From IMG/VR virus record IMGVR_UViG_3300042465_005589, positions 254,165 to 318,164 of that record: DNA of 64,000 nucleotides, one strand, 5' to 3'. The number at the start of each line of letters is the position of its first letter. Positions within the stretch are counted from its first letter, which is position 1. The position numbers and the translations under genes were made by a program. The notes under the pieces were generated by a model. The model was not told the origin of the DNA. It ran no database searches and was given only the letters and a program-made list of their open reading frames with translations. Below are positions 549 through 56,432 of the stretch, one piece after another.

Positions 549-600
549 ATCTATAAATATAGTGTCATAATTATTTCTTATAAATAGAGTAAAATAAAAA

Positions 601-620
601 ATCACGACCGAAGTCGTGAT
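601..620 (-). terminator. Intrinsic terminator after nrdA
   Basis: Minus strand ATCACGAC-TTCG-GTCGTGAT followed by a T-run; 8-bp stem with cUUCGg tetraloop. Confidence 0.85.
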
Positions 621-645
621 TAATGTTATAATTATTTTATTTTAA

Positions 646-3060
646 TTAAGAACCACATCCAAAACACTCAAATTCAGTATCTGTTGGTTTTGTAGTCAAA
701 TCAACTGTTGGTTTCTCAACTGTCTTTGGTTGTTGAATTTTTGTAATGTCAACCGCCAAGTGTTTTGCTCCGGTAGATATCGCTTTTGTTCTAACATAAT
801 AACAAAGAGTTTTCAATCCTTTACCCCAAGAATGGAAGTGAGATGATGAAATCTTTGATAATGTTGGTTCAGACATATAGATATTCATCGATTGTGATTG
901 GTCTATGAATGGTGCTCTGTCTGCCGCCATATCAATAAGTTCTCTTTGTGATATTTCCCAAATCGTTCTATATTTTGGAATCAAATGTTCAATTCGTTTT
1001 ACCTTCTTATTGTAATTCTTATCTTCCGGGTCCAAATAGTGATTAAAGTTAATATTTTGAACAGACCCTTCATTCATAATGATTTCATTCTTCAAATCCT
1101 CACACCAAACACCTAACTTTTCAAAATCGTTAATTAAGTATTTGTTAACTATTAAGATTTCACCCCCAACTACACGACGATTAAATAATGCTGAGTGAGC
1201 TGGTTCTGTCATTTCAAATGAACCTGTAATCTTAGCAGAAGATGCTACTGGCATCTGAGCTGTGAATAACGAGTTACAAACCCCGTGATTGGATACTTCT
1301 AACTTAAGTGAGTCCCAATCCCACATTCTTCCTAATCCTTCGTAATCTAACCCCCACATATCAAATTGGAATATACCTTTTGACATTGGTGACCCATTAA
1401 AGAAGTCGTATGGTTTGTATTCACCTGTTTTACATAGGTTCATACTTTCGGTGATTGCTGCGAAGTAGATTGTTTCAAAAATCTCTTTATTAAGTTTCTT
1501 CGCTTCTTCAGTTGTAAAGATATAATCCATTAAGAAGAATACATCAGCAAGACCTTGTGTTCCAATGGCAATCGCTCTTTGTTCCAACCCACCTTTTCTT
1601 CCTTGTTCAGTTGAATAACTATTGATGTCAACAACTTTGTTAAGTGCTCTAACAACCTTTCTAACTTCACTATAAAGTAATTTGAAATCAAACTCTCCTT
1701 TTATGATGAAGTTCTTCAATACCATAGATGATAACGTACAGATTGCTGTGGTATTCTCATCGGTGAATTGGTAAATCTCATTACATAGGTTAGATTGTTT
1801 AATCACTCCAATGTTTTGATGGTTTGTCTTTCTGTTGGCACTATCTTTAGAACATAAGTAAGGAACTCCGGTTTCAACCTGAGATTCAATAATCTTATTC
1901 CAAATTGTTTGTGCTTTCACTTTCTTACCTAAACCAAGTTCAACCGCTTTGTTGTAATTTGATTCATACTCATCACCGTAAGCTTCTTGTAATGGTTTGA
2001 TACCCGCTTTGATAATGTCGTTAGGACAGAACAAATACCAATCATCATTGTTCTTAACTGCGTTCATAAAGTTGTCCGGTAACCAAATTGAGGTAAATAA
2101 ATCTTTAGCTCTCAATTCTTCTGCCCCCGTATTCTTTTTGATTTCAAGTAAATCAATAATGTCTTTATGCCAAGGTTCAATATAGATAGCTGCACTTCCC
2201 GGTCTTCTACCTTGTTGATTAAAGAATCTTAACCCTTCATTAACAATCTTTAGGTATTTCAATAAACCACCCGCAAATCCTCCTGATGAGTTAATACGAC
2301 TCTCTTTACTACGAATGTTAGACATACATAAACCAATTCCAGCCGCATCTGACGAATAGGTTGAAATGTCATTAAATGTATCCAACAAACCTTGTCTTGA
2401 ATCTCCGTTATTGTACTTCAATACACAAGACGCTAGTTGAGGTGTTTTGGTACCTGCATTAATCATAATTGGTGTTGCCGGAGAGATAAGTTGATTCGAT
2501 AACGAATTATAGTATTCAACCGCCTCTTCAAATGATTTAGTCACCCATAAAGCAACTCTCATATACATATGTTGTGGTCTTTCAACTACAACACCTTTAG
2601 GTGTTTTCAACAAATACATTTCCTGTAATGATTTCCACGCAAAATAATCAAAATTGTAATCATTCTCGTGATTTATTACAGAATCAATATCACCCCAACC
2701 ATATTCGTTAATTGTATCGATTAAGATATCGTTAATAACTCCATCCTCGTGTAAACGTTTCATAGTATTACAGAAACTTTCATCAGTCTCTTTGTGATAC
2801 GCAGATATTGCCACAGATGACGCTAGTCTTGAGTAATCGTGATGACTACCGGTATAAGCCGCAGCAATCTCGTAAACCAATTTATCTAACTCTTTAGTGG
2901 TAATAACACCTTCAGTTGGAACCGAAGTGATTACTTTAATGAATACCTCATCAGCATTTACGTTCAACCCTTTGGCTGCTCTCTTTACTCTGTTGTATAT
3001 TTTTTGGGGGTTAAAGGAAACCTCATCTCCCCCTCTTTTTCTTATTTTTAGTGACATCAT
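646..3060 (-). CDS. nrdA: Ribonucleotide reductase class Ia alpha subunit with ATP cone
   Basis: N-terminal ATP cone, SPATP, LASC, SNLCNE (catalytic Asn/Cys/Glu), YYVR, C-terminal CFGC. Confidence 0.97.
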   Translation of the reverse strand: MMSLKIRKRGGDEVSFNPQKIYNRVKRAAKGLNVNADEVFIKVITSVPTEGVITTKELDKLVYEIAAAYTGSHHDYSRLASSVAISAYHKETDESFCNTMKRLHEDGVINDILIDTINEYGWGDIDSVINHENDYNFDYFAWKSLQEMYLLKTPKGVVVERPQHMYMRVALWVTKSFEEAVEYYNSLSNQLISPATPIMINAGTKTPQLASCVLKYNNGDSRQGLLDTFNDISTYSSDAAGIGLCMSNIRSKESRINSSGGFAGGLLKYLKIVNEGLRFFNQQGRRPGSAAIYIEPWHKDIIDLLEIKKNTGAEELRAKDLFTSIWLPDNFMNAVKNNDDWYLFCPNDIIKAGIKPLQEAYGDEYESNYNKAVELGLGKKVKAQTIWNKIIESQVETGVPYLCSKDSANRKTNHQNIGVIKQSNLCNEIYQFTDENTTAICTLSSMVLKNFIIKGEFDFKLLYSEVRKVVRALNKVVDINSYSTEQGRKGGLEQRAIAIGTQGLADVFFLMDYIFTTEEAKKLNKEIFETIYFAAITESMNLCKTGEYKPYDFFNGSPMSKGIFQFDMWGLDYEGLGRMWDWDSLKLEVSNHGVCNSLFTAQMPVASSAKITGSFEMTEPAHSALFNRRVVGGEILIVNKYLINDFEKLGVWCEDLKNEIIMNEGSVQNINFNHYLDPEDKNYNKKVKRIEHLIPKYRTIWEISQRELIDMAADRAPFIDQSQSMNIYMSEPTLSKISSSHFHSWGKGLKTLCYYVRTKAISTGAKHLAVDITKIQQPKTVEKPTVDLTTKPTDTEFECFGCGS

Positions 3061-3061
3061 A

Positions 3062-4012
3062 TTAAAAATCCTCTGTGAATGTTAATGACTCTCCTAACTT
3101 AGCTTTTTGGTACTCCATAGTTCTTGATTCAAAAAAGTTACCTTTTGTTTCAACAGCAATTTGTTCCATAAATTTGAATGGTTGTTCAACATTAAAATGT
3201 TTCTTACATCCAAACTTAACTAGTAGTCCGTCAGTTACGAATTCAAGATATTGTTTCATCAAGTTTGAATTCATACCAATTAAAGATACAGGTAATGATT
3301 CAGTAATAAACTCTTTTTCAATCTCTAACGCTGATAATAAGATTTCTTTAATTCTTTTCTCCGTTGGTTTGTTTTCAACGTGATTGTTAATCAAATGAAT
3401 TGCAAAATCACAGTGTAAATTCTCATCTTTGAAAATAAGACTATTAGCGTTACATAATCCCTGCATAATTCCTCTTGATTTCATCCAAAAAATAGAACAG
3501 AACGACCCTGAGAAGAAAATTCCTTCAACCGCCGCGAACGCAACTAATCTTTCTTGGAAAGAAGCGTTCTCAATCCAATCAAGAGCCCATTTAGCTTTCT
3601 TTTGAACCGCTGGTAATCTATCAATTGCGTGGAAACATTCGTCTTTCTCTGTCTCATCAGATACATAAGTATCAATCAATAATGAGTACATTAACGAGTG
3701 AATGTTCTCCATCATAATTTGGAATCCGTAGAAGAATTTTGCTTCAGCATACTGAACTTCTTTTAAGAAATTCTCCGCCAAGTTTTCATTTACAATACCA
3801 TCAGACGCTGCGAAAAACGCTAATACATTTTTAAGGAAAAATCTTTCGTTATCAGATAGGTTTTCCCAATCTCTAATATCGTTAGATAAATCCACTTCTT
3901 CAGCTGTCCAAAACGCTGCTTGGTGTTGTTTGTAATATTCCCAAATGTCGTTATGTTCTATTGGGAAGATAACGAATCTGTCATTGTTTGGTTCTAATAT
4001 TTTTTCTTTCAT
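3062..4012 (-). CDS. nrdB: Ribonucleotide reductase class Ia beta subunit
   Basis: [48 protein letters not shown] di-iron motifs. Confidence 0.97.
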
Positions 4013-4013
4013 A

Positions 4014-5399
4014 TTAATTATTTTGTTGTTGGTTTTTTTCTTTTCTCTTGTCTAACAAGTCCTTGATTCTCTGTCTATTTCTTTCTTCGGTTTGTTCTTC
4101 TAAACCTAAGAATGTTACCGAACTTTCAGTATCAATCTCCAACATACCATTATCAAATTTACAATTCTCAAATACAACACCATCATCACCAATACGGGAT
4201 TTAGTTATTGCTATCGTCGCCAATTTCATTTCTTTTTGTTGTAGAGATTTAGCCACGGAAATAATTACGTGTCCAACCTGAGCTTTCTTGATAGAACCAC
4301 CCATTTGGTCGGTTGTTACAACATCTGACGATATTGAACTTCTATTACCCTGAGTTGCTGTCCATCCTACCAAATCAAGTTCGTGACACATAGATTCAAA
4401 ACCTCTCATCACAGACCCTTCAGATTTCCATTCATCCCCCAAGTTTTTATCCGGAACCACACAATCAATGTAGTCTAACAATACCATATCAATTTTGATT
4501 CCTTCTGAAATCATTTTTCTGATTTGATTCTTAATCTGCATCATTGTTATTGTATCAGAGGGTAATTTTTTAAGTATCAATTCATTAGGCATTTTCTCCT
4601 TAATTTCTTGAACTTTAATCATAACCTCTTCTTTTTTTATCGACAATTCATCCGGATGAATCTTTGTCCATAATGTAATGTGTTTACGTTGGATAATCTT
4701 TGGGTTATCCTCAAAGAATATTTGTAAAACGTTATACCCCAAATTAAATGCGTGATTTGCAATTTTTGTAAGTAAGGTAGATTTACCTACCCCTGTTGGT
4801 GCTAAAATAACACCGATTTCACCCTTAGCCAACCCCCCTTTTAAGAGTCTATCTATACCCGGAATACCCATCGGTATCGGATGACGATAATCTTCGTTTA
4901 GAACATCATCTAAGTTACTAAAAACACTTTCCGTTCCCTTATCGTGTTCCCCAACTTGTAATGCCTTACTAACCATTTCCTCTAATGTGTCATAACTCTC
5001 AAATTCACCGGTGTCGATGATTTTTTGAGCTTTAACCATTACTTTCTGTAACTCCTGTTGCTTACAGAACTTCATCGATTTTTCTTGTACAAATTCAGCA
5101 CCTTCAAGCGTGGACTCCTTAACTTTTGTAAGGGTATCAATAATGATTTTAGCCGCTAGAGGTTGTTGTATCTCAGATTTTGTAATTTGTTCTAATGTGT
5201 CAAAGGTTGGTGTGTGTTCGTATTTTGTGTAATATTCTTTAATCATTTGAATGATTAATTTGAAGTATTTATTCTCAAAATAACTTGTTTCAATCACATC
5301 TATAATAGACCTTGAGAAGTCTTTGTCGATAATGATTTGGTTTAATAATTGTATCTGAAAGGTACTCCCCAGATACTCGAAATTTTTGTTTGACGCCAT
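4014..5399 (-). CDS. dnaB: Replicative DnaB/gp41-like helicase
   Basis: Walker [26 protein letters not shown]. Confidence 0.9.
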
Positions 5400-5427
5400 A
5401 TTTTTTCTTTTAGTGTATTAATAAATA

Positions 5428-6911: not shown

Positions 6912-7640
6912 CTATAAAATTTTGTTACTCTTTTTCAAATTATCTTCCGCCCATAGTGGTTGGAGATTTTCATAATGACACAACTTATAAAGTTCGTCTT
7001 CTGTTTTTGCCGATGATAGTGGAATGATGTGGTCAATATGCCACTCACTCCGGTTGTCCCAACTCATACCATCAGTAAATTGGGTTTCTAAATGTTCTTT
7101 TAGAAATTGGGGGGAACAACCTACAATATCAAAAGTTTTGTTTTTTTTGGTGATGTTTCGGGTTTTAAGAAACGATAAAAGTCTAGACCTCATCACACAT
7201 TTTAATCGAAAAATAACATCATTCTTTAATCTTAAAGAATGATAAAGATTTCTTTTTACTTTAACTTTCTCCTTATTTTTTTCTGACCATTCTTTTTTAT
7301 AAGTTAAAATATTTTCTTTATTCTTCTCATAATATATTTTATACCTGTTTGGGTCTTTTTGGTATCTTTTTTTTGACCTATCATTATCTTTTATCCTAAT
7401 AACATCAATATTTTCTTCTCGGTAATTTTTAACTTTTAATAATATTTTTTCCCGGTTATCAACATATTCTTTTCTTTTTTGGTCTTTTATTTTTTCATCG
7501 TTATTATCCCTATATTTTTTCCAAACTAAATAAGAACATTGTTTACATTCAGTTCTAAACCCATCTTTAGAATCTTTTCTTTTTCTAAAATTAGACAATT
7601 CTTTTTTAAGATTACACTTACTACAAACTTTAGTTTCCAT
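6912..7640 (-). CDS. Free-standing HNH homing endonuclease
   Basis: N-terminal CSKC...CKQC zinc finger, basic helical linker, C-terminal WHIDHIIP...NLQPLWAEDNLKK. Confidence 0.85.
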   Translation of the reverse strand: METKVCSKCNLKKELSNFRKRKDSKDGFRTECKQCSYLVWKKYRDNNDEKIKDQKRKEYVDNREKILLKVKNYREENIDVIRIKDNDRSKKRYQKDPNRYKIYYEKNKENILTYKKEWSEKNKEKVKVKRNLYHSLRLKNDVIFRLKCVMRSRLLSFLKTRNITKKNKTFDIVGCSPQFLKEHLETQFTDGMSWDNRSEWHIDHIIPLSSAKTEDELYKLCHYENLQPLWAEDNLKKSNKIL

Positions 7641-7782
7641 TTTTAATATATTCTTTTAATAATTTATTAACAAGGGAAGATAAATTTATAGATTTATCCT
7701 TAAAGTATTGTGGTAATTCGGGGTCAACCGAAACACCAATTTTAACTTTTTTTTCAATTTCTTCTTTTTTCTTTCTTCCCAT
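7630..7782 (-). CDS. Unannotated 50-aa ribbon-helix-helix-like protein
   Basis: Manual translation MGRKKKEEIEKKVKIGVSVDPELPQYFKDKSINLSSLVNKLLKEYIKNGN; overlaps the HNH start by 11 nt; promoter motif at 7787-7794. Confidence 0.65.
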   Translation of the reverse strand: MGRKKKEEIEKKVKIGVSVDPELPQYFKDKSINLSSLVNKLLKEYIKNGN

Positions 7783-7833
7783 ACTAATAAATATCTACAA
7801 ATTATAAAAAAGTAGAATTATTACAACTTTTTT

Positions 7834-10761: not shown

Positions 10762-10804
10762 AATCTTTTATTTATAAATATCTTTTATTTTGAAAAAATT
10801 TAAT

Positions 10805-23041: not shown

Positions 23042-23078
23042 ATATTCTAATTTATCTATAAATAGATTGTACTTTATT

Positions 23079-24974: not shown

Positions 24975-24995
24975 ATTAAATTTCTTTTATAAATA

Positions 24996-25037
24996 AATAC
25001 ACCAAAGACATATTTTAATTTACGTCTTTGGTGTATT
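24996..25037. terminator. 14-bp perfect inverted repeat before the tape measure gene
   Basis: AATACACCAAAGAC-N14-GTCTTTGGTGTATT, followed on the minus strand by TATTTATA. Confidence 0.55.
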
Positions 25038-25917: not shown

Positions 25918-25978
25918 ATAAATTTGTTTTTATTATAAATAATAATTGTATACTTTTTTTTATAAATAGTTAATAAAA

Positions 25979-26520: not shown

Positions 26521-26590
26521 TTCAAATTGTTTTTAATTTTATTTTATTTATCTTTATTTAATAAATATCTCTATTTAAAAAATATTTATC

Positions 26591-30903: not shown

Positions 30904-31026
30904 TAGTTTGTCTTTTTTATTTGTAAATTTATTTTTATTGATAAATATTATAAAAAAAACCAAAATACTTTACTTCATAAGAAGTATTTATAAATTAGGT
31001 AGAATAAATTCTGCCTTTATTCTACC

Positions 31027-32226: not shown

Positions 32227-32673
32227 TTATTGTTTTGTTATAAATATTTTGTTTCTTGAATTTATCATTTCTACTTCACCGGCACGGTATATTGGTTCTT
32301 CGGTGTCTTTCATAACATAAGAATTATATTTGTAAGGGTTATAGGTTACAATATTATTATTAGGTTCACTTGGTAAATTTTCACAAGGGAACTTACAATA
32401 ATCCATTAATGTTCCAATCACAAATGAATGAACATTCTTTCTTTTTTCTTTTATAACCTTTTCTCTACCTCCCGGTCTAACTCTAAATTCAACGTCAGAT
32501 AATTTAACATAGTCACAATGATTAACAACTAATCCTTTATAGATAATTGAGAATGTCTGTTTATGTAAGTTATAATAAATCATAACTTTTTTACCTATGT
32601 AATCATTTTCTTCTTCATCTGAAAAATTTTCAAATATTCTTCTATATTGATTTTCGTTAATTATAATTTTCAT
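32227..32673 (-). CDS. Hypothetical phage protein with MKIIINE leader
   Basis: Likely start MKIIINENQ at 32673; YYNLHK...EKRKNVHSFV core. Confidence 0.65.
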   Translation of the reverse strand: MKIIINENQYRRIFENFSDEEENDYIGKKVMIYYNLHKQTFSIIYKGLVVNHCDYVKLSDVEFRVRPGGREKVIKEKRKNVHSFVIGTLMDYCKFPCENLPSEPNNNIVTYNPYKYNSYVMKDTEEPIYRAGEVEMINSRNKIFITKQ

Positions 32674-33893: not shown

Positions 33894-34215
33894 CTTGATA
33901 TTTTTTTTGTCTTTCGTAATATGATTCCGATTGAATACTTGAATCATTGATTATAACTCTAACATCAAAATAATCTTTTATTGTTTTAGTAATCTCAGTG
34001 TTCCATGATTTTCTATTAAAATCTGAATTTCTCATATTTGAACTTCGTAAATATTCGCTATCATCAGGGACAACATATGTTACCCTCATATAATATTCGT
34101 CACCAGTATCATCAGTAGGTCTTAATTCATAAATAAGTTCAGACACACCATTAGGTTTAATGTGCTTTATCATTTTATTTATTAATCTTTCTAATGTTTC
34201 TTGTTCCATTCTCAT
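33856..34215 (-). CDS. Hypothetical protein
   Basis: 119-aa ORF; promoter motif at 34222-34229; overlaps next gene by 38 nt. Confidence 0.6.
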   Translation of the reverse strand: MRMEQETLERLINKMIKHIKPNGVSELIYELRPTDDTGDEYYMRVTYVVPDDSEYLRSSNMRNSDFNRKSWNTEITKTIKDYFDVRVIINDSSIQSESYYERQKKYQDEQTISTNYTNR

Positions 34216-34218: not shown

Positions 34219-34247
34219 TTGATAAATATTAAATAATTTATTATATT
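34219..34247 (+). promoter_or_regulatory. Sigma70-type promoter upstream of the SNF2 helicase
   Basis: TTGATA-N17-TATATT, overlapping the divergent minus-strand motif. Confidence 0.55.
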
Positions 34248-36041: not shown

Positions 36042-36080
36042 TCCGGTTGTTTAGATATTTATCATAATAAACAAGCCTAC

Positions 36081-37010: not shown

Positions 37011-37018
37011 TATTTATA
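37011..37018 (+). promoter_or_regulatory. Representative phage promoter motif TATTTATA (see findings for other copies)
   Basis: Found on the coding strand shortly upstream of about 17 gene starts. Confidence 0.7.
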
Positions 37019-41386: not shown

Positions 41387-41449
41387 AAATATATTTTTTA
41401 GAATGACATATTAGCACTGACTTTAAATCAGGTTTGTCTTGTTTCTATA

Positions 41450-41478
41450 AATATAAAAGATAATAATTAATAAATCAA
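41450..41478 (-). promoter_or_regulatory. Sigma70-type promoter overlapping the TATTTATA motif, upstream of DNA polymerase
   Basis: Minus strand TTGATT-N17-TATATT; TATTTATA at 41446-41453. Confidence 0.55.
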
Positions 41479-42331: not shown

Positions 42332-42414
42332 CTATTGTTTTTATTTATAAATACTTTGATTTACAAAAATAAACAAATTAACTTTCTTTTCTTAAAAACT
42401 CATGATAAATATTT

Positions 42415-43518: not shown

Positions 43519-43541
43519 AATTAATTGTTTTTTGTATTATA

Positions 43542-46042: not shown

Positions 46043-46048
46043 ACTTTA

Positions 46049-47296
46049 TTATAAATTACCGGTTATTCTATCACGCCAACCTTTTGACGTACTATATGGC
46101 CATACAACCCAATATTTTGGTTTTGATGTTGTTTGGAAATCTCTCCAAACTTTACAATATCCGTCATGGTCTTTCATCATAGCATTTATCTCATTAATAT
46201 CGGCATCTTTTCTATAAAGAGTTTCATCATTTTCATTATGAAATGCTACAACCCAAAATTCATAATCTTTTTCCGGTACTTGTTTAAATGAGATATCGAT
46301 ACAATGTTTGAAAATACTCGCAAAACTTGATAACCATTCTTCTTCCGTCTCATATATGGTAGGGTTTGGTGCGTATTTTTTATCTAAAGTATATTGTTGG
46401 ACAGCTCTATTTGAAAATTTAAGACCTGAATAAATTTCATAATCTTTTAATGTTCTTTCAGTTCCAAATCCATACTTACTAAAATCCATAGTAACTTCTT
46501 CACCGTCCATTCCAAAAAGCTGTCTATTCTTTTTGTGAGATAACTCATTCTTTTTACCCCACTCTTTATCATCATCCCATTGTTTGGTTCTACCCTTACG
46601 AGTATATTCGTGCCAAATAACGGTCTTATGTGGGTGGAATAAATCATATCCGTGAGTGAATGCTCTAACAGCAATTGATATTTCTTCCCCGTGAAAATAA
46701 AATTCAGGGTCGTGTTGAACCTCCACACTAAATTGACCTAATGTGAATGCCATGTGAGCAGAATAAAAACGAGAAGTGATTGGTTGTTTTAATTTTTCCC
46801 AACCAGGTATTGTTTCAGGTAAGAAGAATACCGCACCTTCAGGAATGAATCTATCAAAAGACATTCTCCACGGCTCTTTAACTCTACCTGCCGGGTCATT
46901 CTCGGGGTCAAATGATGAAACATACCCCGTTAACAAAGGTTTCTTAAATCCTTTCTTTTGAAGTTGTTTAATCATTTTGATTAAGGTAGTATCCCAATCT
47001 TTTTCAAATCTCATATGAGAATCTATTTGAAGTGTATACTCCTCACCATCATATAATTGTTGTACTTGATTTCTTGCCCAACAAACACCTTTAGCGTCGG
47101 AATACAAAACATCCTTAACTCTAAATCGTTTATCTTTTTTAAATTTTTCTAAATTATCAAACCCATCTTCAGGGTGATATTGACGACATATACCTATTCT
47201 TAAGTTTTTAGGTCTTTTAGCATTTTCAATCATGCTATCAAGTGTCGGGATAAGCTGGGGGTCACGATAGGAGGCTATCTGTACAAATATTTTCAT
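46049..47296 (-). CDS. GT60-like polypeptide N-acetylglucosaminyltransferase
   Basis: IFVQIASYRD, GVCWAR, LQIDSHMRF, FHGEEI, GYDLFHP...WHEY match the GT60 (Skp1/mucin GlcNAc transferase) pattern. Confidence 0.8.
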   Translation of the reverse strand: MKIFVQIASYRDPQLIPTLDSMIENAKRPKNLRIGICRQYHPEDGFDNLEKFKKDKRFRVKDVLYSDAKGVCWARNQVQQLYDGEEYTLQIDSHMRFEKDWDTTLIKMIKQLQKKGFKKPLLTGYVSSFDPENDPAGRVKEPWRMSFDRFIPEGAVFFLPETIPGWEKLKQPITSRFYSAHMAFTLGQFSVEVQHDPEFYFHGEEISIAVRAFTHGYDLFHPHKTVIWHEYTRKGRTKQWDDDKEWGKKNELSHKKNRQLFGMDGEEVTMDFSKYGFGTERTLKDYEIYSGLKFSNRAVQQYTLDKKYAPNPTIYETEEEWLSSFASIFKHCIDISFKQVPEKDYEFWVVAFHNENDETLYRKDADINEINAMMKDHDGYCKVWRDFQTTSKPKYWVVWPYSTSKGWRDRITGNL

Positions 47297-47435
47297 TTAT
47301 CTCTTGTTTTACACAAAAGATAATAATCTATAATCAAATATAAATAATATTATTTTAATAATTTATTAAGGGGATGAAACAAAAGTTGATGGATTTATTA
47401 ACCTAATTTTAAGATTATAAGTTTATTGATTTTAG

Positions 47436-49364
47436 TTAGTTTATAAAAGAAAGAAATTTTTTATTACTACTACTGTAAAGTACCCAAGAAGCACCATAGT
47501 TAGAAGATATTTGAGTTTGAAACGCAATTGTAGTTCCAAGCATATATTGTCCAGAATTAGATATATCTGTTTTGATAATAGAACTACCAAAAGTATTCGT
47601 AGTCCAACTAACACCAAAATTATTTGTGGTAATAACTCTATTATTAGTAGCACCTACTATTCCATATCTTCCATCATAACTTAACTTAAGGTCTTCATTA
47701 AAATCTTGACTAACAATACTCATTATTGACCAAGTTGCACCAAAATCAGTACTTCTGTAACTATTTCCAACTGCTGAAACTAACATCATATATAATCCAT
47801 TTCCTGATACTGCAACACCTTGAAAATTACTAGAATTTGCGGCTGATTGCGAAGGAAAAATATTTAATGTTATATTTGTAAAAGTTATTCCATAATTTGT
47901 AGATAGTAAAACATATTTTAATGAACTTGAATCATAACCTGCAATAATAACATATTGACCATCCCACGATACACTAGATTGGATAATTAATGTAAAAGCC
48001 ACAGGAAATGATGCAGGACTCCAACTTGTTCCAAAATCACCACTTCTTAAAAGAGTGCCTCCTGATTCAACATACATATATTGTCCATTTTTAGATATTG
48101 AAGTCTCCCCAATAAAACCAGAACCCACCCCAATAGGTGTTGAGTAAGAATTACCATAATCTGAAGATATCTTTACTTGTAAAGGAGAAGTTGCTCCTGC
48201 AGCCGCTATAGAGTATTGGTAATTATCGGAAGCATTTATTCCATAATTTGTAGTGACGCCAACAGACGTTAGTTGACTTATTTCAACAAGTGTATCATCA
48301 TATATTCTAAAAAATGGAGATGAATTAGATGTACCTAACATATCCCCTACTCCAAAAACAGGTGTAGGTATTGATGTTGGAGTAGGTGTTGGAGTCGCAG
48401 TTGAGGTTGGTGTTGCCGTTGGTGTAGGTGTAGATGTCGGAGTAGATGTCGGAGTTGATGTTGGCGTCGCAGTCGGTGTTGGTGTGGATGTCGGAGTAGA
48501 TGTTGGTGTTGATGTTGGTGTTGCCGTTGGAGTTGATGTTGGAGTCGCAGTTGGTGTAGGTGTAGGTGTTGGAGTCGCAGTTGGTGTTGCCGTTGGTGTA
48601 GGTGTTGGTGTAGGTGTAGGACAAGGATTTAAAATTTGACAAGTATTAATATCCGGTTGACTATTTAATAAAATGTATGAATACTGATTCGTTGAGGTTA
48701 TTGGTGATATTGATGTTACACAACCAACATATCCACTACTTTGAACATAATAAACCCCTGACAATGGAGAATAAGATGTAGGAATATTATAAACTATAAA
48801 AGTGTTTGATGGGTTACAACTATCTTGGAAATACCCCACAATAGGTGCTAATGTTTGTGTTGGAGTAGTTGTTGGTGTTGCAGTAGGTACTGGTGCACAA
48901 GTATTATCAACACACACCTCATTAATCAGAATGTTTACCCCCACATCAGCAGAAGGTAATCTACCGCAATAATATAAGGTAGTCCCTGATTGAATAACAC
49001 TGTTTAACACAACGTTATTACATTGGGTTAAACTAAAGTTTAAAGTTCCCGAAGTTGTATTTTCAAATGATATACAATTACAAACAACAACCATTGTTGG
49101 AGTCGGAGTTGGTGTTGTTGTTGGAGTTGGTGTTGGTGGTAATGGACAACTTTCTAATAAAAATTCTTCACACCCTATTGAATCAGTCACAACAACTAAA
49201 ACCTGACTAGCACCTTCTAATTGAGAAGGGATTGGAAGTTCTAATGTTGGAGGAACAGAAACAACACCGGTTGCAACCACATAACAATACGTTAATGTTA
49301 AATCACATATTGATATATCAAATGGTGAGTGTCCGTTTAAACTGGTTATTTCTATTACTTGCAT
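47436..49364 (-). CDS. Pro-Thr repeat virion-type protein with C-terminal Asp-box (BNR) beta-propeller
   Basis: Start MQVIEI at 49364 (motif at 49369-49376); three PT tracts; six S/T-x-D/N-(F/Y)-G-x-(S/T)-(W/F/Y) repeats. Confidence 0.7.
48361..48620 (-). repeat. Pro-Thr(-Ser/Ala) coding repeat, ~86 aa
   Basis: [20 protein letters not shown]...PTSIPTP in the translation. Confidence 0.9.
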
Positions 49365-49468
49365 TACAATAAATATAGTTAGAATTATTTTACCATAAAT
49401 ACTTAACAATATTAAAGTTTACTATGGAACTTTATTAGTAATTTATTATTTTTATAATAAAAAAAAAT

Positions 49469-52400
49469 ATGTCGTTAAAGATTAACCATTACGATTTTAT
49501 TGAAATTGGTACGTCAGATTTTGATACTTTAATTGAAACCTCCAATGACAATACTGTCGGTATTAGTATTGAACCTATAAAATATTACATAAATAGATTA
49601 CCTGATAAACAGAATATTATTAAAGTCCAAGCGGCATTATCAACAACAGATGGTGAAGTCGATGTGTACTATATTGAAGATTCTAAAATAGAAGAGAATA
49701 ACTTACCTTGGTGGGTTAGAGGAAGTAACTCAATAAATAATCCTCACCCTTTTGCTATTAAAGAATTAGGTGAAGAATTATACAATAGTTTGGTAACTAT
49801 TGAAAAAGTTCCAACAATTAGTTGGGAAACATTAATTAAAAGATATGATGTTGGTTCAATCGGTTATCTAAAGATTGATACTGAAGGTCACGACCATATC
49901 ATCTTCAGAGATTTTTTAAACTATTGTAAAGAACATTCATTTCCAATCCCAAACAAAATAACACTAGAATATCACGATGGTGTGTCAAACAAAGTTGAGA
50001 TTGATAAATTAATATCGGAATTACCTGAATATCAAATTATCAAACACATTAGTGATATTACATTAATGAAACCTCTAATACCGAGAGTAATACATCAAAC
50101 ATATAAAACTAATGATTTACCAACAGAAATAAGTGAGGTAGTTCAAAGGTTAAAAGATATGAATCCAACTTTTGAGTATAAATTCTACAACGATAACGAT
50201 TGTGTTGAATTTATTAAAGAAAATTATGATGAAGAAACTCTTAATCTTTATTTAAGTATTAACCCAAATTATGGGTCGGCTAAATCTGATTTTTTTAGAT
50301 ACCTTTTAATGTATAAAGTTGGTGGTGTTTATTTGGATATTAAAAGTTGTACTACTAAACCTTTGGAAGAAGTTTTATTACCAACCGATGAATATCTATT
50401 AACTCATTGGGAAGGATTGGATTGGGCAGATGAATTAAAATATTATTTTGGCGAATTTCAAAATTGGCATATTATCTGTAAACCAAATCACCCATTTTTA
50501 AAAAGGGTAATTGAAATTGTTAAAGACAATATTAAAAATTATATTGGTGGGTCGGATAAATATTCTGTGTTAAGATTGACAGGTCCAATCGCTTATAGTA
50601 AAGGAATTATTGAACTTATATCTCAACATAAGAAAAATAGTGTTGATTCACCCGTTAGAGAATTTTTATTAGAAAACGAGATTGGGTTACAATATATGTC
50701 AACCACAATACATCATCATAATCTAATTGATAGTTCGTATTCAAAAAGAGAACCTTTAATTTTAAAAGATAAGGTTGAGAAATCATATCTATTATATGCA
50801 ACCGAAAACTATTTGGATGTTGCAAAGATGTGTATTAAATCAATCCGAGAATATAGTGATTTACCAATTTTCTTATATCTTATTAATTCTAATAAAGTTG
50901 TGGATATTAAAGATGTTGCAACCATAAATTGGAATGTAGAATTAGTTGATGATAATTCTGATAGATACATTCAAGAGGGTGACAATTTTTACATTAATAG
51001 AACCAATAAAACGATTTATAACATCTTAATACAAAAACCATTAATCACTAAAGACGTTTTATCTAAATACACTAAAACGGTTGCATTTATTGATTGTGAT
51101 TCAATTGCAACACCATATGTTGATAGAATCTTTGACTTATACGATAATGATAAAGATTACCCTTATTTTGTTGAAGGGATTTATGATTTTCTACACGTAG
51201 GTGAACGAGGTGGTGCTATGACTAGAGATGATATGTCAACCACGTTGGAACATCCGGCGTGTGAATTATTTAATGTTAATCAGTATGTTAGAGAAAAATA
51301 CCGACAAACAGGTTATTATGTTGCAAATGAAAAATGTATTGATTTTTTATACGAATGGTATCAAATGTGTTCTCACCCTGAAGTATTAAATAATATACCA
51401 TATTATGCGGCATATAATGAGGAGACCATCCTAAATGTGTTATTGTGGAAAAAATTAATATTTGATGGATTACCTTACATTTACGCTAACGGAAATTTAG
51501 AATTGATTGATAATATCTATTCAAACTACAATATTAGTGAAGAAAGTTTATGGATTAAGATTCCAAATAAGAAAGATGATTTGTTATTTATTCACGGAGA
51601 AAAGAACATTTTAGAAATGGGTAAAATAATATCAAAAATTAAAAACCATAATAAAGAAAAAATTAAAGTATTATTCTTGGCACCACATCTGTCAACCGGA
51701 GGGATGCCATCATTCCTATTAAAACGAATCGAATCGTTATTAGAATATTATAAAGATAAAACGGAATTATTTGTTGTGGAATATTCTAACCATAGTGACC
51801 ACTATGTGGTTCAAAAAAATAGAATTAAAAAATTAATACCTCCATCACATTTTTGGACGTTAGGTGAAGATAAAAACGAATTAAAGAAAATTATTGAGGA
51901 AAATTATTTTGACATAATTCACTTGGATGAAATGATTGAAGATTTTGATGCTCATAATAAATTATCAAATGAGTTAATGAATTTCATTTATAAAAATGAC
52001 CGAACTTGGAGAGTAGTGGAAACTTGTCATAACGTTGTATTCCAACCGGAAAAAGATAAAGTGTTTCATCCTGAAGCATACGCTTATTGTTCACCATTTC
52101 ATAAAGAATCAACATTCTTGAATATGCCATCGTATGGTGAAGTAATTGAATTTCCGTATAACCCTACAATTGTAATAGATAAAGAAAGTAATAAAGAAAA
52201 ATTAGGTTTAGACCCAAATAAAATTCACATTATAAATGTTGGATTATGGACACCAGGTAAAAATCAAGAAGAAGGTGTTGAGATTGCAAAATTAGTTGAG
52301 GGTATTCACCCTGAATTAGAATTCCATTTCATTGGGAATCAAGCACCTAACTTTCAAGATTATTGGATACCAATTATGAAAGATTTACCATCAAACGTTA

Positions 52401-53812
52401 AAGTATGGGGGGAGAAAGATAATGTTAGTGATTTTATGTGTGCCGCTGATGTATTGATGTTTAACTCAACTTGGGAATGTAATCCGTTAGTATTAAGAGA
52501 AGGTATTTCTTATGGATTAAAAATTTTAGCAAGAAACTTACCTCAATATATGGATATGTTTACACCTTATATAACACAATTGTCAGGTGATATTTTTGAC
52601 ATGAAAAATCAACTTTTAGATTTAATTAAAGATGAAAGTTATTACGAATTCCCAACATATAGAACAAAAGAATTTGCTGAAAAAAATTACGAGTTATACC
52701 AAAAAATATTAAACGAACCAATTAAAAAACAAACCATGATAGATAATGAAGTACAAATATTCCAACATTTTGTTAAAGAACCATTTTTAGAAATAAAAGG
52801 AACTGGAGACAAAGATTACAATGTTAAATTCTTTGATGAAGAAGGTATTTGTCATTATGAGAATACCATAAAACCAAATCATTGGGTTAAATTAAATAGA
52901 AGTTATTACACCAAATGGAGAGCAGTTGTTACTCGAGATAATGAGGTAATTTATGATAACACTATGGATTTAACAAATAAAAGAGTTTACATATCTTTCG
53001 ATAGTAAATCTTTAGGTGACTCGATTGCTTGGATTCCTTATGTTTTAGAATTTAAAAAGAAACACGATTGTAAAGTTATTGTATCTACATTTTGGAATCA
53101 TTTATTTGAAAATGAATATCCTGAAATTGAGTTTGTTGTACCGGGAACGACCGTACATAATCTTTATGCTATGTACACAATCGGATGGTTCTACAATACA
53201 GATAAAGAACCTGTATTACCAAACACAATACCATTACAACAAACAATTACTAACATATTAGGATTAGAATTTAAAGAGATTAAACCTAATATACACAACA
53301 CCATTCACCCAAGACCTTATCAAAAGAAATATGTTACCATAGCAACTAACTCAACAGCAGGGTGTAAATTTTGGACAAGAGAAGGATGGCAATCACTAAT
53401 TAACTATCTTCATAATTTAGGATATAAAGTAATAAACGTATCCAAAGAAGATAATCCGTTTGAAAATGCAAACAAGATTAAAAACACCTCAATTCATCAC
53501 ACAATGAATGTAATTCACCATAGCGAATTCTTTATCGGATTATCTAGTGGTTTATCTTGGTTAGCTTGGGCGTTAGGTAAACAAGTTGTAATGATTTCTA
53601 ACTTTACAAATGAGGAACATGAGTTTATGTTTAATTGTACTAGAATTGTAAATCATTCTGTTTGTAACGGATGTTGGAATAAACCTGAATTTACCTTTGA
53701 TAAAGGTGATTGGAATTGGTGTCCTGTTAATAAAGGAACTGAAAAACAATTTGAATGTCATAAATCGATAACACCGGAAATGGTTATTAATCAAATACAA
53801 CATTTACTATAA
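49469..53812 (+). CDS. Multidomain glycan-building enzyme: FkbM-like + GT32-like + DxD domain + GT4-like + Aah/TibC-like domain
   Basis: IEIGTSD/LKIDTEG; IPRVIHQT...SDFFRY...GGVYLD; FIDCD; LAPHLSTGG...GKNQ; SKSLGDSIAW...GLSSGLSWLAWA...CNGC...WCP...FEC. Confidence 0.75.
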   Translation: MSLKINHYDFIEIGTSDFDTLIETSNDNTVGISIEPIKYYINRLPDKQNIIKVQAALSTTDGEVDVYYIEDSKIEENNLPWWVRGSNSINNPHPFAIKELGEELYNSLVTIEKVPTISWETLIKRYDVGSIGYLKIDTEGHDHIIFRDFLNYCKEHSFPIPNKITLEYHDGVSNKVEIDKLISELPEYQIIKHISDITLMKPLIPRVIHQTYKTNDLPTEISEVVQRLKDMNPTFEYKFYNDNDCVEFIKENYDEETLNLYLSINPNYGSAKSDFFRYLLMYKVGGVYLDIKSCTTKPLEEVLLPTDEYLLTHWEGLDWADELKYYFGEFQNWHIICKPNHPFLKRVIEIVKDNIKNYIGGSDKYSVLRLTGPIAYSKGIIELISQHKKNSVDSPVREFLLENEIGLQYMSTTIHHHNLIDSSYSKREPLILKDKVEKSYLLYATENYLDVAKMCIKSIREYSDLPIFLYLINSNKVVDIKDVATINWNVELVDDNSDRYIQEGDNFYINRTNKTIYNILIQKPLITKDVLSKYTKTVAFIDCDSIATPYVDRIFDLYDNDKDYPYFVEGIYDFLHVGERGGAMTRDDMSTTLEHPACELFNVNQYVREKYRQTGYYVANEKCIDFLYEWYQMCSHPEVLNNIPYYAAYNEETILNVLLWKKLIFDGLPYIYANGNLELIDNIYSNYNISEESLWIKIPNKKDDLLFIHGEKNILEMGKIISKIKNHNKEKIKVLFLAPHLSTGGMPSFLLKRIESLLEYYKDKTELFVVEYSNHSDHYVVQKNRIKKLIPPSHFWTLGEDKNELKKIIEENYFDIIHLDEMIEDFDAHNKLSNELMNFIYKNDRTWRVVETCHNVVFQPEKDKVFHPEAYAYCSPFHKESTFLNMPSYGEVIEFPYNPTIVIDKESNKEKLGLDPNKIHIINVGLWTPGKNQEEGVEIAKLVEGIHPELEFHFIGNQAPNFQDYWIPIMKDLPSNVKVWGEKDNVSDFMCAADVLMFNSTWECNPLVLREGISYGLKILARNLPQYMDMFTPYITQLSGDIFDMKNQLLDLIKDESYYEFPTYRTKEFAEKNYELYQKILNEPIKKQTMIDNEVQIFQHFVKEPFLEIKGTGDKDYNVKFFDEEGICHYENTIKPNHWVKLNRSYYTKWRAVVTRDNEVIYDNTMDLTNKRVYISFDSKSLGDSIAWIPYVLEFKKKHDCKVIVSTFWNHLFENEYPEIEFVVPGTTVHNLYAMYTIGWFYNTDKEPVLPNTIPLQQTITNILGLEFKEIKPNIHNTIHPRPYQKKYVTIATNSTAGCKFWTREGWQSLINYLHNLGYKVINVSKEDNPFENANKIKNTSIHHTMNVIHHSEFFIGLSSGLSWLAWALGKQVVMISNFTNEEHEFMFNCTRIVNHSVCNGCWNKPEFTFDKGDWNWCPVNKGTEKQFECHKSITPEMVINQIQHLL

Positions 53813-55312: not shown

Positions 55313-55324
55313 AAAATTTTAATT

Positions 55325-55777
55325 ATGGCAATATATTGGTTTACAGGTCAGCCCGGAGCAGGTAAGACCACATTAGCAAAACAACTTAAAGATTATCTAC
55401 ACCCAAGTAATGTAATGCTTGTTGATGGAGATGACATTAGAGATGTGTTTCAGAATAAAGATTACTCTGAAAATGGCAGAAGAAAAAATATTGAGAAAGC
55501 ACAAGACATCTCATTATTTTTAGATTCAAAAGGATTTGATGTAATAGTTTCATTAGTATCTCCTTATAAAGACCAACGTGATGAATTTAAAAACAAACAT
55601 AATGTTTTAGAGTTTTACATTCACACCGAAGATATTAGAGGAAGAGAAGATTATCACGTATCTAACTATGAACCACCAACTGAAAATTTTGTGGATGTGG
55701 ATACAACAAATGTTATTGAACAAATCTCTATAGGAATAATTATAAATAAAATTAATGAATATAAATTAAATGGATAA
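55325..55777 (+). CDS. cysC: Adenylylsulfate (APS) kinase
   Basis: WFTGQPGAGKTT, LVDGDDIR, VSLVSPY, YEPP. Confidence 0.88.
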   Translation: MAIYWFTGQPGAGKTTLAKQLKDYLHPSNVMLVDGDDIRDVFQNKDYSENGRRKNIEKAQDISLFLDSKGFDVIVSLVSPYKDQRDEFKNKHNVLEFYIHTEDIRGREDYHVSNYEPPTENFVDVDTTNVIEQISIGIIINKINEYKLNG

Positions 55778-56180
55778 TTGGGAAAGAAAAACACACGTAC
55801 AAGCAGCATTCGCTTCATCATCGTCAAATAAAAAATATTCAATGTTTGTAGGTAGATGGCAACCGTGGCATCATGGTCATAGAGCATTAATTGACCAACA
55901 ATTGAATAGAGATAAAAATATCCTACTATGTGTTAGAGATGTTGAAATTGATGATAAAAATCCGTTTTCAACAGAATGGGTTATTGAAAACTTAAACAAA
56001 GAATTAAAAGACCTAATTGATGAAGGAAGATTAGTGATTCAGGTTATTCCGGATATAGAAAGTGTTAATATTGGTAGAGGTGTTGGATATGATGTTTATG
56101 AACATTTCCCTCCTGAGGATATTAAAAACATTTCTGCAACAAAAATTAGAGAACAAATGAAAAAAGACGGTAAACTATAA
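55770..56180 (+). CDS. HxGH-class nucleotidyltransferase (candidate minimal ATP sulfurylase)
   Basis: GRWQPWHHGH, KNPF, ISATKIR; coupled between cysC and DUF2061. Confidence 0.7.
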   Translation: MDNWERKTHVQAAFASSSSNKKYSMFVGRWQPWHHGHRALIDQQLNRDKNILLCVRDVEIDDKNPFSTEWVIENLNKELKDLIDEGRLVIQVIPDIESVNIGRGVGYDVYEHFPPEDIKNISATKIREQMKKDGKL

Positions 56181-56395
56181 TGGTAGAAGTAAAACGACAC
56201 ATAGGTAAAGCCGTTAGTTATAGAATGTTAGGGACATTACAAACCTGTATAATCTCATACTTATTTACAGGAAATTTTTTGATTTCAGGTAGTATCGGAT
56301 TAACAGAATTATGTATAAAACCATTAATATATTTCCTACACGAAAGAGTGTGGTATAAATGGATAAAGTTTGGATTAAAAGAAAATAAAGAATAA
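56180..56395 (+). CDS. DUF2061-like small membrane protein
   Basis: KAVSYRMLGTLQT...TG...IG...E...K...YFLHERVW. Confidence 0.75.
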   Translation: MVEVKRHIGKAVSYRMLGTLQTCIISYLFTGNFLISGSIGLTELCIKPLIYFLHERVWYKWIKFGLKENKE

Positions 56396-56396
56396 T

Positions 56397-56432
56397 ATGA
56401 ATGTAATTTTTCAAATCAAACTATTTATATAA
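56397..56432 (+). pseudogene. Remnant duplicate of the GT9-like gene start (MNVIFQIKLFI*)
   Basis: ATGAATGTAATTTTT matches ATGAATGTAATATTT at 57143 in 14 of 15 nt; begins 1 nt after the DUF2061 stop. Confidence 0.65.

What the first reader, a model, noticed from the sequence alone, without database searches (positions are those of the whole stretch)
552..56429. Strand-specific TATTTATA motif before about 17 genes: the reverse complement of the T4 late promoter
Seen on the coding strand 4-60 nt before starts: 552, 579, 5421, 7787, 10773, 23057, 24988, 25934, 25961, 26561, 30941, 34222, 41446, 42346, 47339, 49369 (minus genes) and 30985, 36055, 37011, 56422 (plus genes). Orientation flips with gene strand. 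A rough estimate at 70% AT gives only 1-2 such hits by chance, though intergenic DNA is more AT-rich. Established: T4 gp55 reads TATAAATA on the non-template strand. Inference: a distinct late-promoter specificity giving very short leaders; it also fixes several start codons.
Basis: partly seen in the sequence, partly recalled or inferred. Interest (0 to 1): 0.6.

Follow-up and report, generated by a model that had tools for sequence, protein, structure and literature searches.

The report
Phage-specific TATTTAT promoter motif
A 318-kb uncultured T4-like jumbo phage, apparently of freshwater Bacteroidota, places a strand-specific TATTTAT box a fixed few bases before about a hundred genes, most likely a promoter read by the phage's own sigma factor; this is a new promoter consensus for a known kind of phage switch.

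Summary
All 20 reported sites carry TATTTAT on the stated strand, and 13 carry the full 8-mer. In the intergenic DNA upstream of window genes, sense TATTTAT occurs 22 times against 2.0±1.5 in shuffles. Genome-wide the figures are 73 against 10.2 (z=20). The antisense copy and the T4-type TATAAATA are not enriched.

The box lies exactly 4 nt before the ATG in 23 genes, and 13-17 nt before it in most others. The phage's host-type Bacteroidota -7 boxes (TATCTTTG) show the same 4-nt spacing, so TATTTAT sits at about -11 to -5 and many mRNAs are leaderless or have very short leaders.

At the sheath gene, AATATTTAT is invariant in 26 diverged relatives while its flanks vary. A TATTTA core recurs at a syntenic site in phages whose sigma is only 31-51% identical.

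The genome encodes a divergent gp55-like sigma and a SigA-like sigma. A search for a multisubunit RNA polymerase beta subunit found nothing; the search for a T7-type polymerase was uninformative.

TATTTAT serves structural and replication genes. TATCTTTG serves early-type genes.

The best reading is a phage-specific middle/late promoter class, a new variant of the T4-late idea. No transcript ends could be mapped.

The parts
553..559 (-). TATTTAT box, 4 nt before ATG 548 of a 152-aa gene (90-548); predicted leaderless. A second, distal copy lies at 580-586.
5421..5427 (-). TATTTAT box, 21 nt before ATG 5399 of the DnaB-like helicase, which heads the helicase, RNR small and RNR large subunit operon (646-5399).
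7787..7793 (-). TATTTAT box, 4 nt before ATG 7782 of a 50-aa basic protein (7630-7782), followed by endonuclease VII-like and exonuclease genes; predicted leaderless.
10774..10780 (-). TATTTAT box, 12 nt before ATG 10761 (74-aa gene, then a 221-aa gene, SSB-like and UvsX-like genes). It is part of the palindrome TATTTATAAATA, so a + strand copy at 10769 is a by-product.
23058..23064 (-). TATTTAT box, 16 nt before ATG 23041 of the 1671-aa protein, followed by 108-aa and 2300-aa proteins. The box and its leader are conserved in close relatives.
24989..24995 (-). TATTTAT box, 14 nt before ATG 24974 (631-aa protein). An overlapping second copy lies at 24993-24999. It directly follows a hairpin plus T-run.
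25935..25941 (-). TATTTAT box, 17 nt before ATG 25917 of the baseplate-hub-like gene. It is kept in relatives, either exactly or as the TATTTTAT variant. The distal copy at 25962-25968 is not conserved.
26561..26567 (-). TATTTAT box, 40 nt before ATG 26520 of the tail-tube gene.
30941..30947 (-). TATTTAT box, 37 nt before ATG 30903 of the tail-sheath gene (27577-30903). AATATTTAT is invariant in 26 unique relatives while the flanks vary.
30985..30991 (+). TATTTAT box, 35 nt before ATG 31027 of a 54-aa protein. The leader holds an 11-bp hairpin (30998-31026) that abuts the ATG.
32240..32246 (-). TATTTAT box, 14 nt before ATG 32225 of a 345-aa protein. It lies within the 3' end of the upstream ORF.
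34222..34228 (-). TATTTAT box, 6 nt before ATG 34215 of a 119-aa ORF (33856-34215).
36056..36062 (+). TATTTAT box, 18 nt before ATG 36081 (309-aa protein).
37011..37017 (+). TATTTAT box, 14 nt before ATG 37032 (380-aa protein with a weak head-tail adaptor match).
41447..41453 (-). TATTTAT box, 60 nt before ATG 41386 of the DNA polymerase.
42347..42353 (-). TATTTAT box, 15 nt before ATG 42331 (281-aa protein). It is a palindromic site, and a host-type TATTTTTG box lies 10 nt upstream of it (32 nt before the ATG).
47340..47346 (-). TATTTAT box, 43 nt before ATG 47296 of a glycosyltransferase operon. It overlaps a host-type TATATTTG box.
49369..49375 (-). TATTTAT box, 4 nt before ATG 49364 (642-aa protein, 47436-49364); predicted leaderless. 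A distal copy lies at 49395-49401.
56422..56428 (+). TATTTAT box, 19 nt before ATG 56448 (homing-endonuclease-like protein).

Best explanation
TATTTAT (extended form a-TATTTAT-nnnn-A, core TATTTA in relatives) is the -10-type element of a phage-specific promoter class. It lies on the non-template strand at about -11 to -5. It has no -35 partner, and transcription starts about 5 nt past its last T. This gives leaderless mRNAs where the ATG sits there, and leaders of roughly 9-13 nt in most other cases.

The host is inferred to be a member of the Bacteroidota. Its RNA polymerase first reads host-type TATCTTTG (-7 box) promoters before early-type genes, including a phage SigA-like sigma. The polymerase is then redirected by a phage-encoded sigma to the TATTTAT promoters that head the replication and virion gene units. 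The redirecting sigma is most likely the divergent gp55-like 249-aa factor at genome 28630-29379, outside the window.

Shown here: strand-specific enrichment, fixed spacing, conservation, the two motif classes with different gene sets, and the presence of two sigma genes.

Inferred: that the box is a promoter, where the start site lies, which sigma reads it, and the temporal order.
For: 1. Enrichment and strand bias survive intergenic dinucleotide shuffles. In the window, sense TATTTAT is 22 against 2.0±1.5. Genome-wide it is 73 against 10.2±3.1, with the antisense copy at background.
2. Spacing to the ATG peaks at exactly 4 nt in 23 genes, about 15 of them unrelated to each other, with a second mode at 13-17 nt. 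Eight of the phage's host-type TA..TTTG boxes show the same 4-nt spacing. In Flavobacterium johnsoniae that box spans -12 to -5, with 4-5 nt to the start site (PMC6847099).
3. Around the predicted start, the 4-nt class has T at -1 in 21 of 23 sites. The 10-20-nt class has A at +1 to +3 in 40-44 of 47 sites, against about 33% at control copies.
4. The motif stands before 102 of 229 genes with an upstream gap of 20 nt or more, but before only 8 of 191 genes with a shorter gap.
5. Phylogenetic footprint: AATATTTAT is invariant in 26 unique relatives at the sheath gene while the flanks vary. The hub promoter is also kept.
6. At the syntenic spacer after the sigma gene, exact TATTTAT is present in 6 of 9 lineages (the query plus five of eight relatives whose sigma is 31-51% identical). 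One of these is a 53% GC contig where it is the only copy in 9.9 kb. Two further lineages have a one-mismatch form. A 45%-identity lineage has TATTTA before 6 of 7 gaps.
7. A separate host-type class exists: TATCTTTG occurs 19 times against 0.2 expected. It serves thymidylate synthase, an SbcC-like protein, a protease and the SigA-like sigma. TATTTAT serves portal, virion protein, sheath, tube, hub, DNA polymerase and DnaB-RNR.
8. Sigma factors: the 249-aa protein matches only sigma factors by fold. Its match to T4 gp55 (7d7c_F) has Z 10.8 and rmsd 3.4 Å over 115 residues. By profile, hhalign against gp55 gives E 1.7e-4, the five best PDB profile hits are all sigma factors, and phrog_234 gives E 0.005. 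A 266-aa SigA-like sigma matches solved SigA at E 4e-46.
9. No RNA polymerase beta-subunit domain was found, although the control genomes matched.
Against: - No transcript 5' ends are available.
- The sigma assignment is indirect. Sequence support for a gp55 relationship is marginal: hhalign probability 49%, Pfam Sigma70_r2 E 0.046 (below the cut-off), phrog_234 E 0.005.
- The 249-aa protein has an extra C-terminal domain that gp55 lacks.
- No gp45 clamp was found.
- The conserved small gene next to the sigma gene is not gp33-like.
- About half of the genes with sizeable upstream gaps lack an exact box.
- Gene calls are my own simple ORF calls.
- Some exact copies, such as the distal one at 25962, are not conserved.
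- The host is inferred, not known.
Confidence: 0.68

Rival explanations
1. The box is a phage-specific promoter as described, but it is read by the phage's SigA-like 266-aa sigma (genome 209549-210349) or by both sigmas. It is not read by the gp55-like 249-aa factor.
For: The 266-aa protein is a clear sigma-70 family member with regions 2-4. It is made from a host-type promoter unit, so it would be available early. Bacteroidota promoters have a weak -33 element (PMC6847099), so the lack of a -35 does not exclude a full-length sigma.
Against: The TATTTA core travels with the 249-aa sigma gene in distant lineages. A -10-only architecture is the hallmark of gp55-type factors (PMC2988020). A primary-like sigma would be expected to read the host-like TATCTTTG class.
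Confidence: 0.17
2. TATTTAT is read by a host factor rather than a phage-encoded sigma. The host factor could be sigma A tolerating a variant -7 box, or a host alternative sigma, perhaps helped by a phage activator.
For: The spacing to the ATG is the same as for host -7 boxes. T-8 and T-7 are shared in register. An AT-rich patch 15-17 nt upstream of the box recalls the AT-rich -28 signal of F. johnsoniae promoters.
Against: The box lacks the nearly invariant A-11 and G-5 of TAnnTTTG. None of the six motif classes mapped in F. psychrophilum resembles it (PMC9723704). The phage keeps a separate, very uniform TATCTTTG class for other genes. It also carries two sigma genes.
Confidence: 0.1
3. The sites are ordinary T4-type late promoters (N)ATAAATA on the opposite strand, firing away from the adjacent gene as antisense or crossing transcription.
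For: TATTTAT is the exact complement of the ATAAATA core. The base that would be -13 is T in 57% and A in 29% of sites, which is like T4. The phage is T4-like and has a gp55-like sigma.
Against: In co-directional gene arrays this orientation would give only antisense RNA. ATAAATA and TATAAATA in the sense orientation before genes are at background. The sharp spacing to the downstream ATG and the conserved bases after the box have no explanation under this reading.
Confidence: 0.03
4. The motif acts at the RNA or translation level, as a leader element, processing site or ribosome-loading signal, or is merely AT-rich intergenic composition. It is not a promoter.
For: It lies close to start codons in a genome without Shine-Dalgarno sequences: 18 of 421 genes have one, with A-rich positions at -3 and at -11 to -14.
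Against: With 4-nt spacing the box cannot be in the mRNA unless another promoter lies upstream. The spacing is bimodal and ranges up to 60 nt, which is unlike a ribosome site. Dinucleotide-preserving shuffles and the unenriched complement exclude composition. The box is invariant while the leader varies.
Confidence: 0.03

Closest known systems
T4 late promoters (TATAAATA at -13 to -6) read by gp55 with gp33 and the gp45 clamp
   Same: Both are a single AT-only -10-region box with no -35 element, repeated many times across a T4-like myovirus genome, on both strands, before virion genes. A small phage sigma with a gp55-like region-2 fold is encoded.
   Different: The sequence is the reverse complement of the T4 box, and the T4 orientation is not enriched. 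The box lies about 1-2 nt closer to the start. It also heads replication genes. The sigma is 249 aa with an extra C-terminal domain. No gp45 or gp33 homologue was detected. The host is a member of the Bacteroidota rather than the Proteobacteria or Cyanobacteria.
Bacteroidota sigma A promoters (-7 TAnnTTTG, weak -33 TTTG)
   Same: The distance from the box to the start or ATG is the same (4 nt), and there is no Shine-Dalgarno context. The phage uses this host type (TATCTTTG) for a second gene set.
   Different: TATTTAT lacks A-11 and G-5. It shares only T-8 and T-7 when aligned in register, and it serves a different gene set.
Sigma cascades of other phages (SPO1 gp28 and gp33/34; phiEco32/7-11 gp36)
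   Same: A phage-encoded sigma redirects host core polymerase from host-type early promoters to phage-specific middle or late promoters (papers listed; details from my own knowledge).
   Different: Those factors recognise bipartite or other consensus sequences in Firmicutes or Enterobacteria. There is no sequence relation to this box or to this sigma family.
'Moraphages', aquatic jumbo phages predicted to infect Bacteroidota (PMC12619734)
   Same: Shared features are freshwater jumbo genomes of 200-307 kb, T4-like tail and baseplate core genes, a core sigma factor, a Clp-type protease and a predicted Flavobacteriia host. The window's genome has a similar content.
   Different: Membership was not tested because no sequences of that paper were compared. 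That paper does not analyse promoters.

Membership tests
T4-type late promoter system (gp55/gp33/gp45) | Consensus TATAAATA on the non-template strand upstream of late genes | tested here: not met
   Sense TATAAATA occurs 7 times against 4.2 expected genome-wide, and 2 against 1.0 in the window. The enriched word is its complement TATTTAT(A).
T4-type late promoter system (gp55/gp33/gp45) | A single -10-region element with no -35 element | tested here: met
   An alignment of 118 sites shows information only in the box, at -1 before it, and at +1 to +8 after it. Upstream there is only a weak A/T preference 15-17 nt before the box.
T4-type late promoter system (gp55/gp33/gp45) | A gp55-family sigma encoded by the phage | tested here: inconclusive
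   For the 249-aa protein: VIA Z 10.8 and rmsd 3.4 Å over 115 aa against gp55 7d7c_F; hhalign E 1.7e-4 with probability 49%; phrog_234 E 0.005; T4 gp55 itself finds nothing by sequence. The protein has an extra C-terminal domain.
T4-type late promoter system (gp55/gp33/gp45) | A gp45 sliding clamp and a gp33 co-activator | tested here: not met
   Neither T4 gp45 nor phrog_223 gives a match in the genome. The conserved 125-aa gene beside the sigma gene shows no gp33 similarity (hhalign probability 0.3%). These are sequence-level tests only, so distant analogues are not excluded.
T4-type late promoter system (gp55/gp33/gp45) | Transcripts start about 6 nt downstream of the box, late in infection | not testable with these tools
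There is no cultured host.
Bacteroidota sigma A promoter | -7 box TAnnTTTG (T-12, A-11, T-8, T-7, T-6, G-5) | tested here: not met
   In register by the shared 4-nt spacing, the box reads a-T-A-T-T-T-A-T, so only T-8 and T-7 agree. True TATCTTTG boxes form a separate class.
Bacteroidota sigma A promoter | 4-5 nt between the box and the start site | tested here: inconclusive
   A spacing peak of 4 nt to the ATG is seen in 23 genes, which would fit leaderless starts. No start site has been mapped.
Sigma-70 family (for the 249-aa protein) | Region-2 fold that binds core polymerase and the -10 non-template strand | tested here: met
   All top Foldseek and VIA matches are sigma factors. Residues 26-145 match sigma region 2 (sigma E, RpoS, sigma 70; Z 9-11; rmsd 2.5-3.4 Å). 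The PDB profile hits are SigA region 2, E 0.008. Pfam Sigma70_r2 falls below its cut-off.

The most novel reading that the evidence does not exclude
A large, almost wholly uncultured family of two-domain, gp55-like phage sigma factors reprograms Bacteroidota RNA polymerase to a conserved TATTTA(T) -10-only promoter. The family has more than 1,100 clusters at 50% identity, and its only cultured carrier is a 25%-identical homologue in a Microcystis phage. The sigma and its box would have co-inherited across phages from 27% to 53% GC, and the promoter often yields leaderless mRNAs. This would be an orthogonal sigma/promoter pair for a phylum whose transcription signals are unusual, and a second, independently diverged specificity within the T4 late-transcription lineage.
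Probability: 0.45. Interest if true: 0.75.

Novelty: new variant of a known kind. Interest (0 to 1): 0.6.

Why it matters
Late promoters of T4-related phages have so far looked nearly uniform: TATAAATA or close variants from enterobacterial phages to cyanophages (PMC2988020). Here a distant T4-like jumbo phage, abundant in lakes, uses a different box, a divergent sigma and apparently leaderless starts, in a host phylum with non-canonical promoters and no Shine-Dalgarno sequences.

If confirmed, it gives four things:
- a rule for annotating transcription units and start codons in this phage group;
- a natural early/late promoter pair (TATCTTTG and TATTTAT) for timing studies;
- a candidate orthogonal sigma/promoter tool for Flavobacteria and Bacteroides genetics;
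- a test case for how gp55-type factors change specificity.

Tried and rejected
- T4 gp55 and gp45 proteins, phrog_12791 and phrog_223 against the genome gave no match.
- PF00940 (T7-type polymerase) gave nothing, but the control matched nowhere, so the result is uninformative.
- phmmer of the 249-aa protein against PDB gave nothing. Only the profile of its family reached sigma factors.
- No third promoter motif emerged from k-mer analysis of the 90 upstream regions that lack both boxes.
- Terminator-like hairpins precede only 12 of 118 boxes, no more often than other intergenic regions (20 of 127), so the arrangement of a terminator followed by a promoter is not a defining feature.
- Microcystis phage Mel-JY01 is the only cultured phage with a homologue of the sigma (25% identity). 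It showed no clear TATTTAT pattern in 40 kb.
- The GC-rich relative P0136 has no kin in IMG/VR.
- The alignment upstream of the 631-aa gene held only close relatives and was uninformative.
- The small gene beside the sigma gene shows no similarity to T4 gp33.
- blastn of the window against cultured phages gave no match.
- Literature searches for TATTTATA or TATTTAT as a phage or Bacteroidota promoter found nothing relevant.

Full report
**Context**

The window is bases 254165-318164 of a single 318,164-bp virus contig with 31% GC. IMG/VR and CheckV rate it complete.

It is a distant T4-like myovirus. It encodes ribonucleotide reductase, a DnaB-like helicase, UvsX-like and SSB-like proteins, a family-B DNA polymerase, a gp18-like sheath, a tube, a baseplate hub and a portal. 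No cultured phage matches at the DNA level. Thousands of near-identical proteins occur in metagenomes. The runs that hold parts of it are lake, freshwater, wastewater and marine samples.

**Observation**

All 20 sites carry TATTTAT on the stated strand. Thirteen carry the full TATTTATA, and seven read ATATTTAT followed by T or C.

The plain window count of the 8-mer is only mildly high: 28 against 16.4±3.7. The signal is positional.
- In the upstream intergenic pieces of the window, sense TATTTAT occurs 22 times against 2.0±1.5 in dinucleotide shuffles. The complement occurs 6 times against 2.8, and T4-type TATAAATA 2 times against 1.0.
- In all co-directional intergenic DNA of the genome, sense TATTTAT is 73 against 10.2±3.1 (z=20), antisense 16 against 13.7, and TATAAATA 7 against 4.2.
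- The box stands before 102 of 229 genes that have an upstream gap of 20 nt or more, and before 8 of 191 that do not.

**Anatomy**

An alignment of the 118 gene-proximal copies gives a-TATTTAT-(a)(a)(w)(t)-A-(w)-R. The only upstream signal is a weak A/T preference 15-17 nt before the box. There is no -35-like element.

The distance from the last T to the ATG is bimodal. It is exactly 4 nt in 23 genes, about 15 of them unrelated and about 8 from one paralogous family. It is 13-17 nt in most of the rest.

In the 4-nt class the base before the ATG is T in 21 of 23 sites. In the 10-20-nt class the three bases starting 5 nt after the box are A in 40-44 of 47 sites, against about a third at control copies. 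This pattern, pyrimidine at -1 and A at +1, is what a start site 5 nt after the box would give.

**A second motif class calibrates the first**

Many box-less upstream regions, mainly before small genes between 60 and 190 kb of the genome, carry a very uniform TATCTTTG. It occurs 19 times against 0.2 expected in co-directional intergenic DNA, and its complement is at background.

This is the Bacteroidota sigma A -7 box TAnnTTTG. In Flavobacterium johnsoniae it spans T-12 to G-5, with 4-5 nt to the start site (PMC6847099; see also PMC9723704).

Eight of these phage boxes lie exactly 4 nt before an ATG. Both classes therefore share the same box-to-ATG geometry. That places TATTTAT at about -11 to -5 and makes the 4-nt genes leaderless.

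Only 18 of 421 genes have a Shine-Dalgarno-like word, and A is favoured at -3 and at -11 to -14. This fits translation signals described for Bacteroidota. The host is therefore inferred to be a member of the Bacteroidota. This is an inference.

**Which genes**

- TATTTAT units hold sheath, tube, hub, portal, a virion protein, the giant 1671- and 2300-aa proteins, DNA polymerase, the DnaB-RNR operon and the recombination/SSB cluster.
- TATCTTTG units hold thymidylate synthase, an SbcC-like nuclease, an ATP-dependent protease, a SigA-like sigma and many small unknown proteins.
- By a simple unit assignment, 222 genes (median 200 aa) fall under TATTTAT and 98 genes (median 116 aa) under the host-type box.

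This reads as early genes against everything after early. It does not read as strictly late.

**Conservation**

At the sheath gene, AATATTTAT is invariant in 26 unique relatives. The 10 columns before it are 42-96% conserved, and the leader after it varies and has indels. The divergent partner box for the 54-aa gene is kept as TATTT(A/G)T. At the hub gene the proximal box is kept, exact or as TATTTTAT, whereas the distal copy at 25962 is not.

The spacer between the sigma gene and a conserved gene of about 120 aa carries exact (G)ATATTTAT in 6 of 9 lineages: the query and five of eight relatives, found through sigma homologues of 31-51% identity. Two further lineages have a one-mismatch form. 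One exact case is a 53% GC contig where it is the only TATTTAT in 9.9 kb. A 45%-identity lineage has TATTTA before 6 of 7 sizeable gaps. The conserved core is therefore TATTTA.

**Sigma factors**

The genome shows no match to the multisubunit polymerase beta-subunit domain, and the controls matched. The T7-type search was uninformative.

Two sigma-like genes lie outside the window.

(i) A 249-aa protein at genome 28630-29379.
- Sequence evidence is marginal: phrog_234 'late sigma' E 0.005, Pfam Sigma70_r2 E 0.046.
- A profile of 74 diverse homologues hits only sigma factors in PDB: SigA region 2 at E 0.008 and gp55 at E 0.11.
- The AlphaFold model has pLDDT 90.9. It matches only sigma factors. 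T4 gp55 gives Z 10.8 and rmsd 3.4 Å over 115 residues, and full-length alignments to sigma E, H and 70 also cover the C-terminal domain.
- hhalign to T4 gp55 gives E 1.7e-4 with probability 49%, stronger than to the phage's own SigA-like protein at E 0.059.
- The family is large, with 1,118 clusters at 50% identity. Its only cultured carrier is Microcystis phage Mel-JY01 at 25% identity.

(ii) A 266-aa SigA-like sigma at genome 209549-210349. It matches Sigma70_r2 at 63 bits and PDB SigA at E 4e-46. It sits behind a TATCTTTG promoter unit.

**Mechanism proposed**

Host holoenzyme, possibly helped by the SigA-like factor, reads the TATCTTTG promoters. A phage sigma then directs core polymerase to the -10-only TATTTAT promoters.

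I favour the gp55-like factor for three reasons. The -10-only architecture is the gp55 hallmark (PMC2988020). The TATTTA core travels with that gene across lineages. A primary-like sigma is the natural reader of the host-like class.

My estimates are about 0.85 that the box is a sense-oriented promoter element, and about 0.6 that the 249-aa sigma reads it.

**Rivals**

- T4-type (N)ATAAATA on the other strand. This is excluded as the expression signal by the unenriched sense counts and by the spacing to the downstream ATG.
- A host-sigma variant.
- The SigA-like factor as reader.
- An RNA-level or translation signal.
- Composition, which the shuffles exclude.

**Comparison and novelty**

The system works like T4 late transcription, but it fails the defining consensus. 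It shows no gp45 or gp33 homologue, and its sigma has an extra domain. I therefore file it as a new variant, not a member.

Full-text searches found no description of this box as a phage or Bacteroidota promoter. A 2025 paper on aquatic 'moraphages' describes similar genomes and a core sigma but no promoters. Membership of that lineage was not tested.

**Limits**

I worked beside that stretch and sent none of its letters to search tools afterwards.
- Gene calls are my own greedy ORF calls using the first ATG.
- Close relatives are not independent samples.

Noticed in passing
genome 58-219 kb (outside the window); in the window, variant TA..TTTG boxes (TATTTTTG near 42363, TATATTTG near 47335): There is a second, very uniform promoter-like class, TATCTTTG (the Bacteroidota -7 box). 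It occurs 19 times against 0.2 expected, before small genes, thymidylate synthase, an SbcC-like gene, a protease and a sigma gene. Eight copies lie exactly 4 nt before an ATG.
   Followed up: partly
genome 65-88 kb (L095, L096): A cluster of about 23 tRNA genes, all on the minus strand.
   Followed up: partly
genome about 116-166 kb: A paralogous gene family with N-termini like MKIIITESQY. Each copy has its own TATTTAT box 4 nt before the ATG, often preceded by a C-rich hairpin plus T-run.
   Followed up: no
window 7630-7782 (-) and 31027-31191 (+): Two small basic proteins of 50 and 54 aa with a ribbon-helix-helix-like look, each behind its own box. Similar MxxRKKKEE starts occur elsewhere in the genome. 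They may be DNA-binding regulators.
   Followed up: no
window 30998-31026 (+): An 11-bp hairpin abuts the ATG of the 54-aa gene (-12.2 kcal/mol, z -3.7) and is present in relatives. It may control translation.
   Followed up: partly
window 58053-63998 (-): A protein of more than 1,980 aa with collagen triple-helix repeats runs off the contig end. Local GC rises to 45% against a 31% genome mean.
   Followed up: no
window 49469-53812 (+): A 1,447-aa fusion of an FkbM-type methyltransferase and three glycosyltransferase domains. It lies next to a further glycosyltransferase operon at 42415-47296.
   Followed up: no
genome 27824-31704; L086-L111: The gene order glycosyltransferase, 249-aa sigma, protein of about 120 aa, protein of about 630 aa is conserved in all distant relatives examined. 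The small protein is not gp33-like by hhalign.
   Followed up: partly
window 10769-10780 and 42342-42353: The palindrome TATTTATAAATA puts a box on both strands. Only the copy facing the gene fits the spacing pattern.
   Followed up: yes
window 56448-57146 and 6912-7640: Homing-endonuclease-like and HNH/endonuclease VII-like genes lie among core genes, one of them directly behind a box.
   Followed up: no
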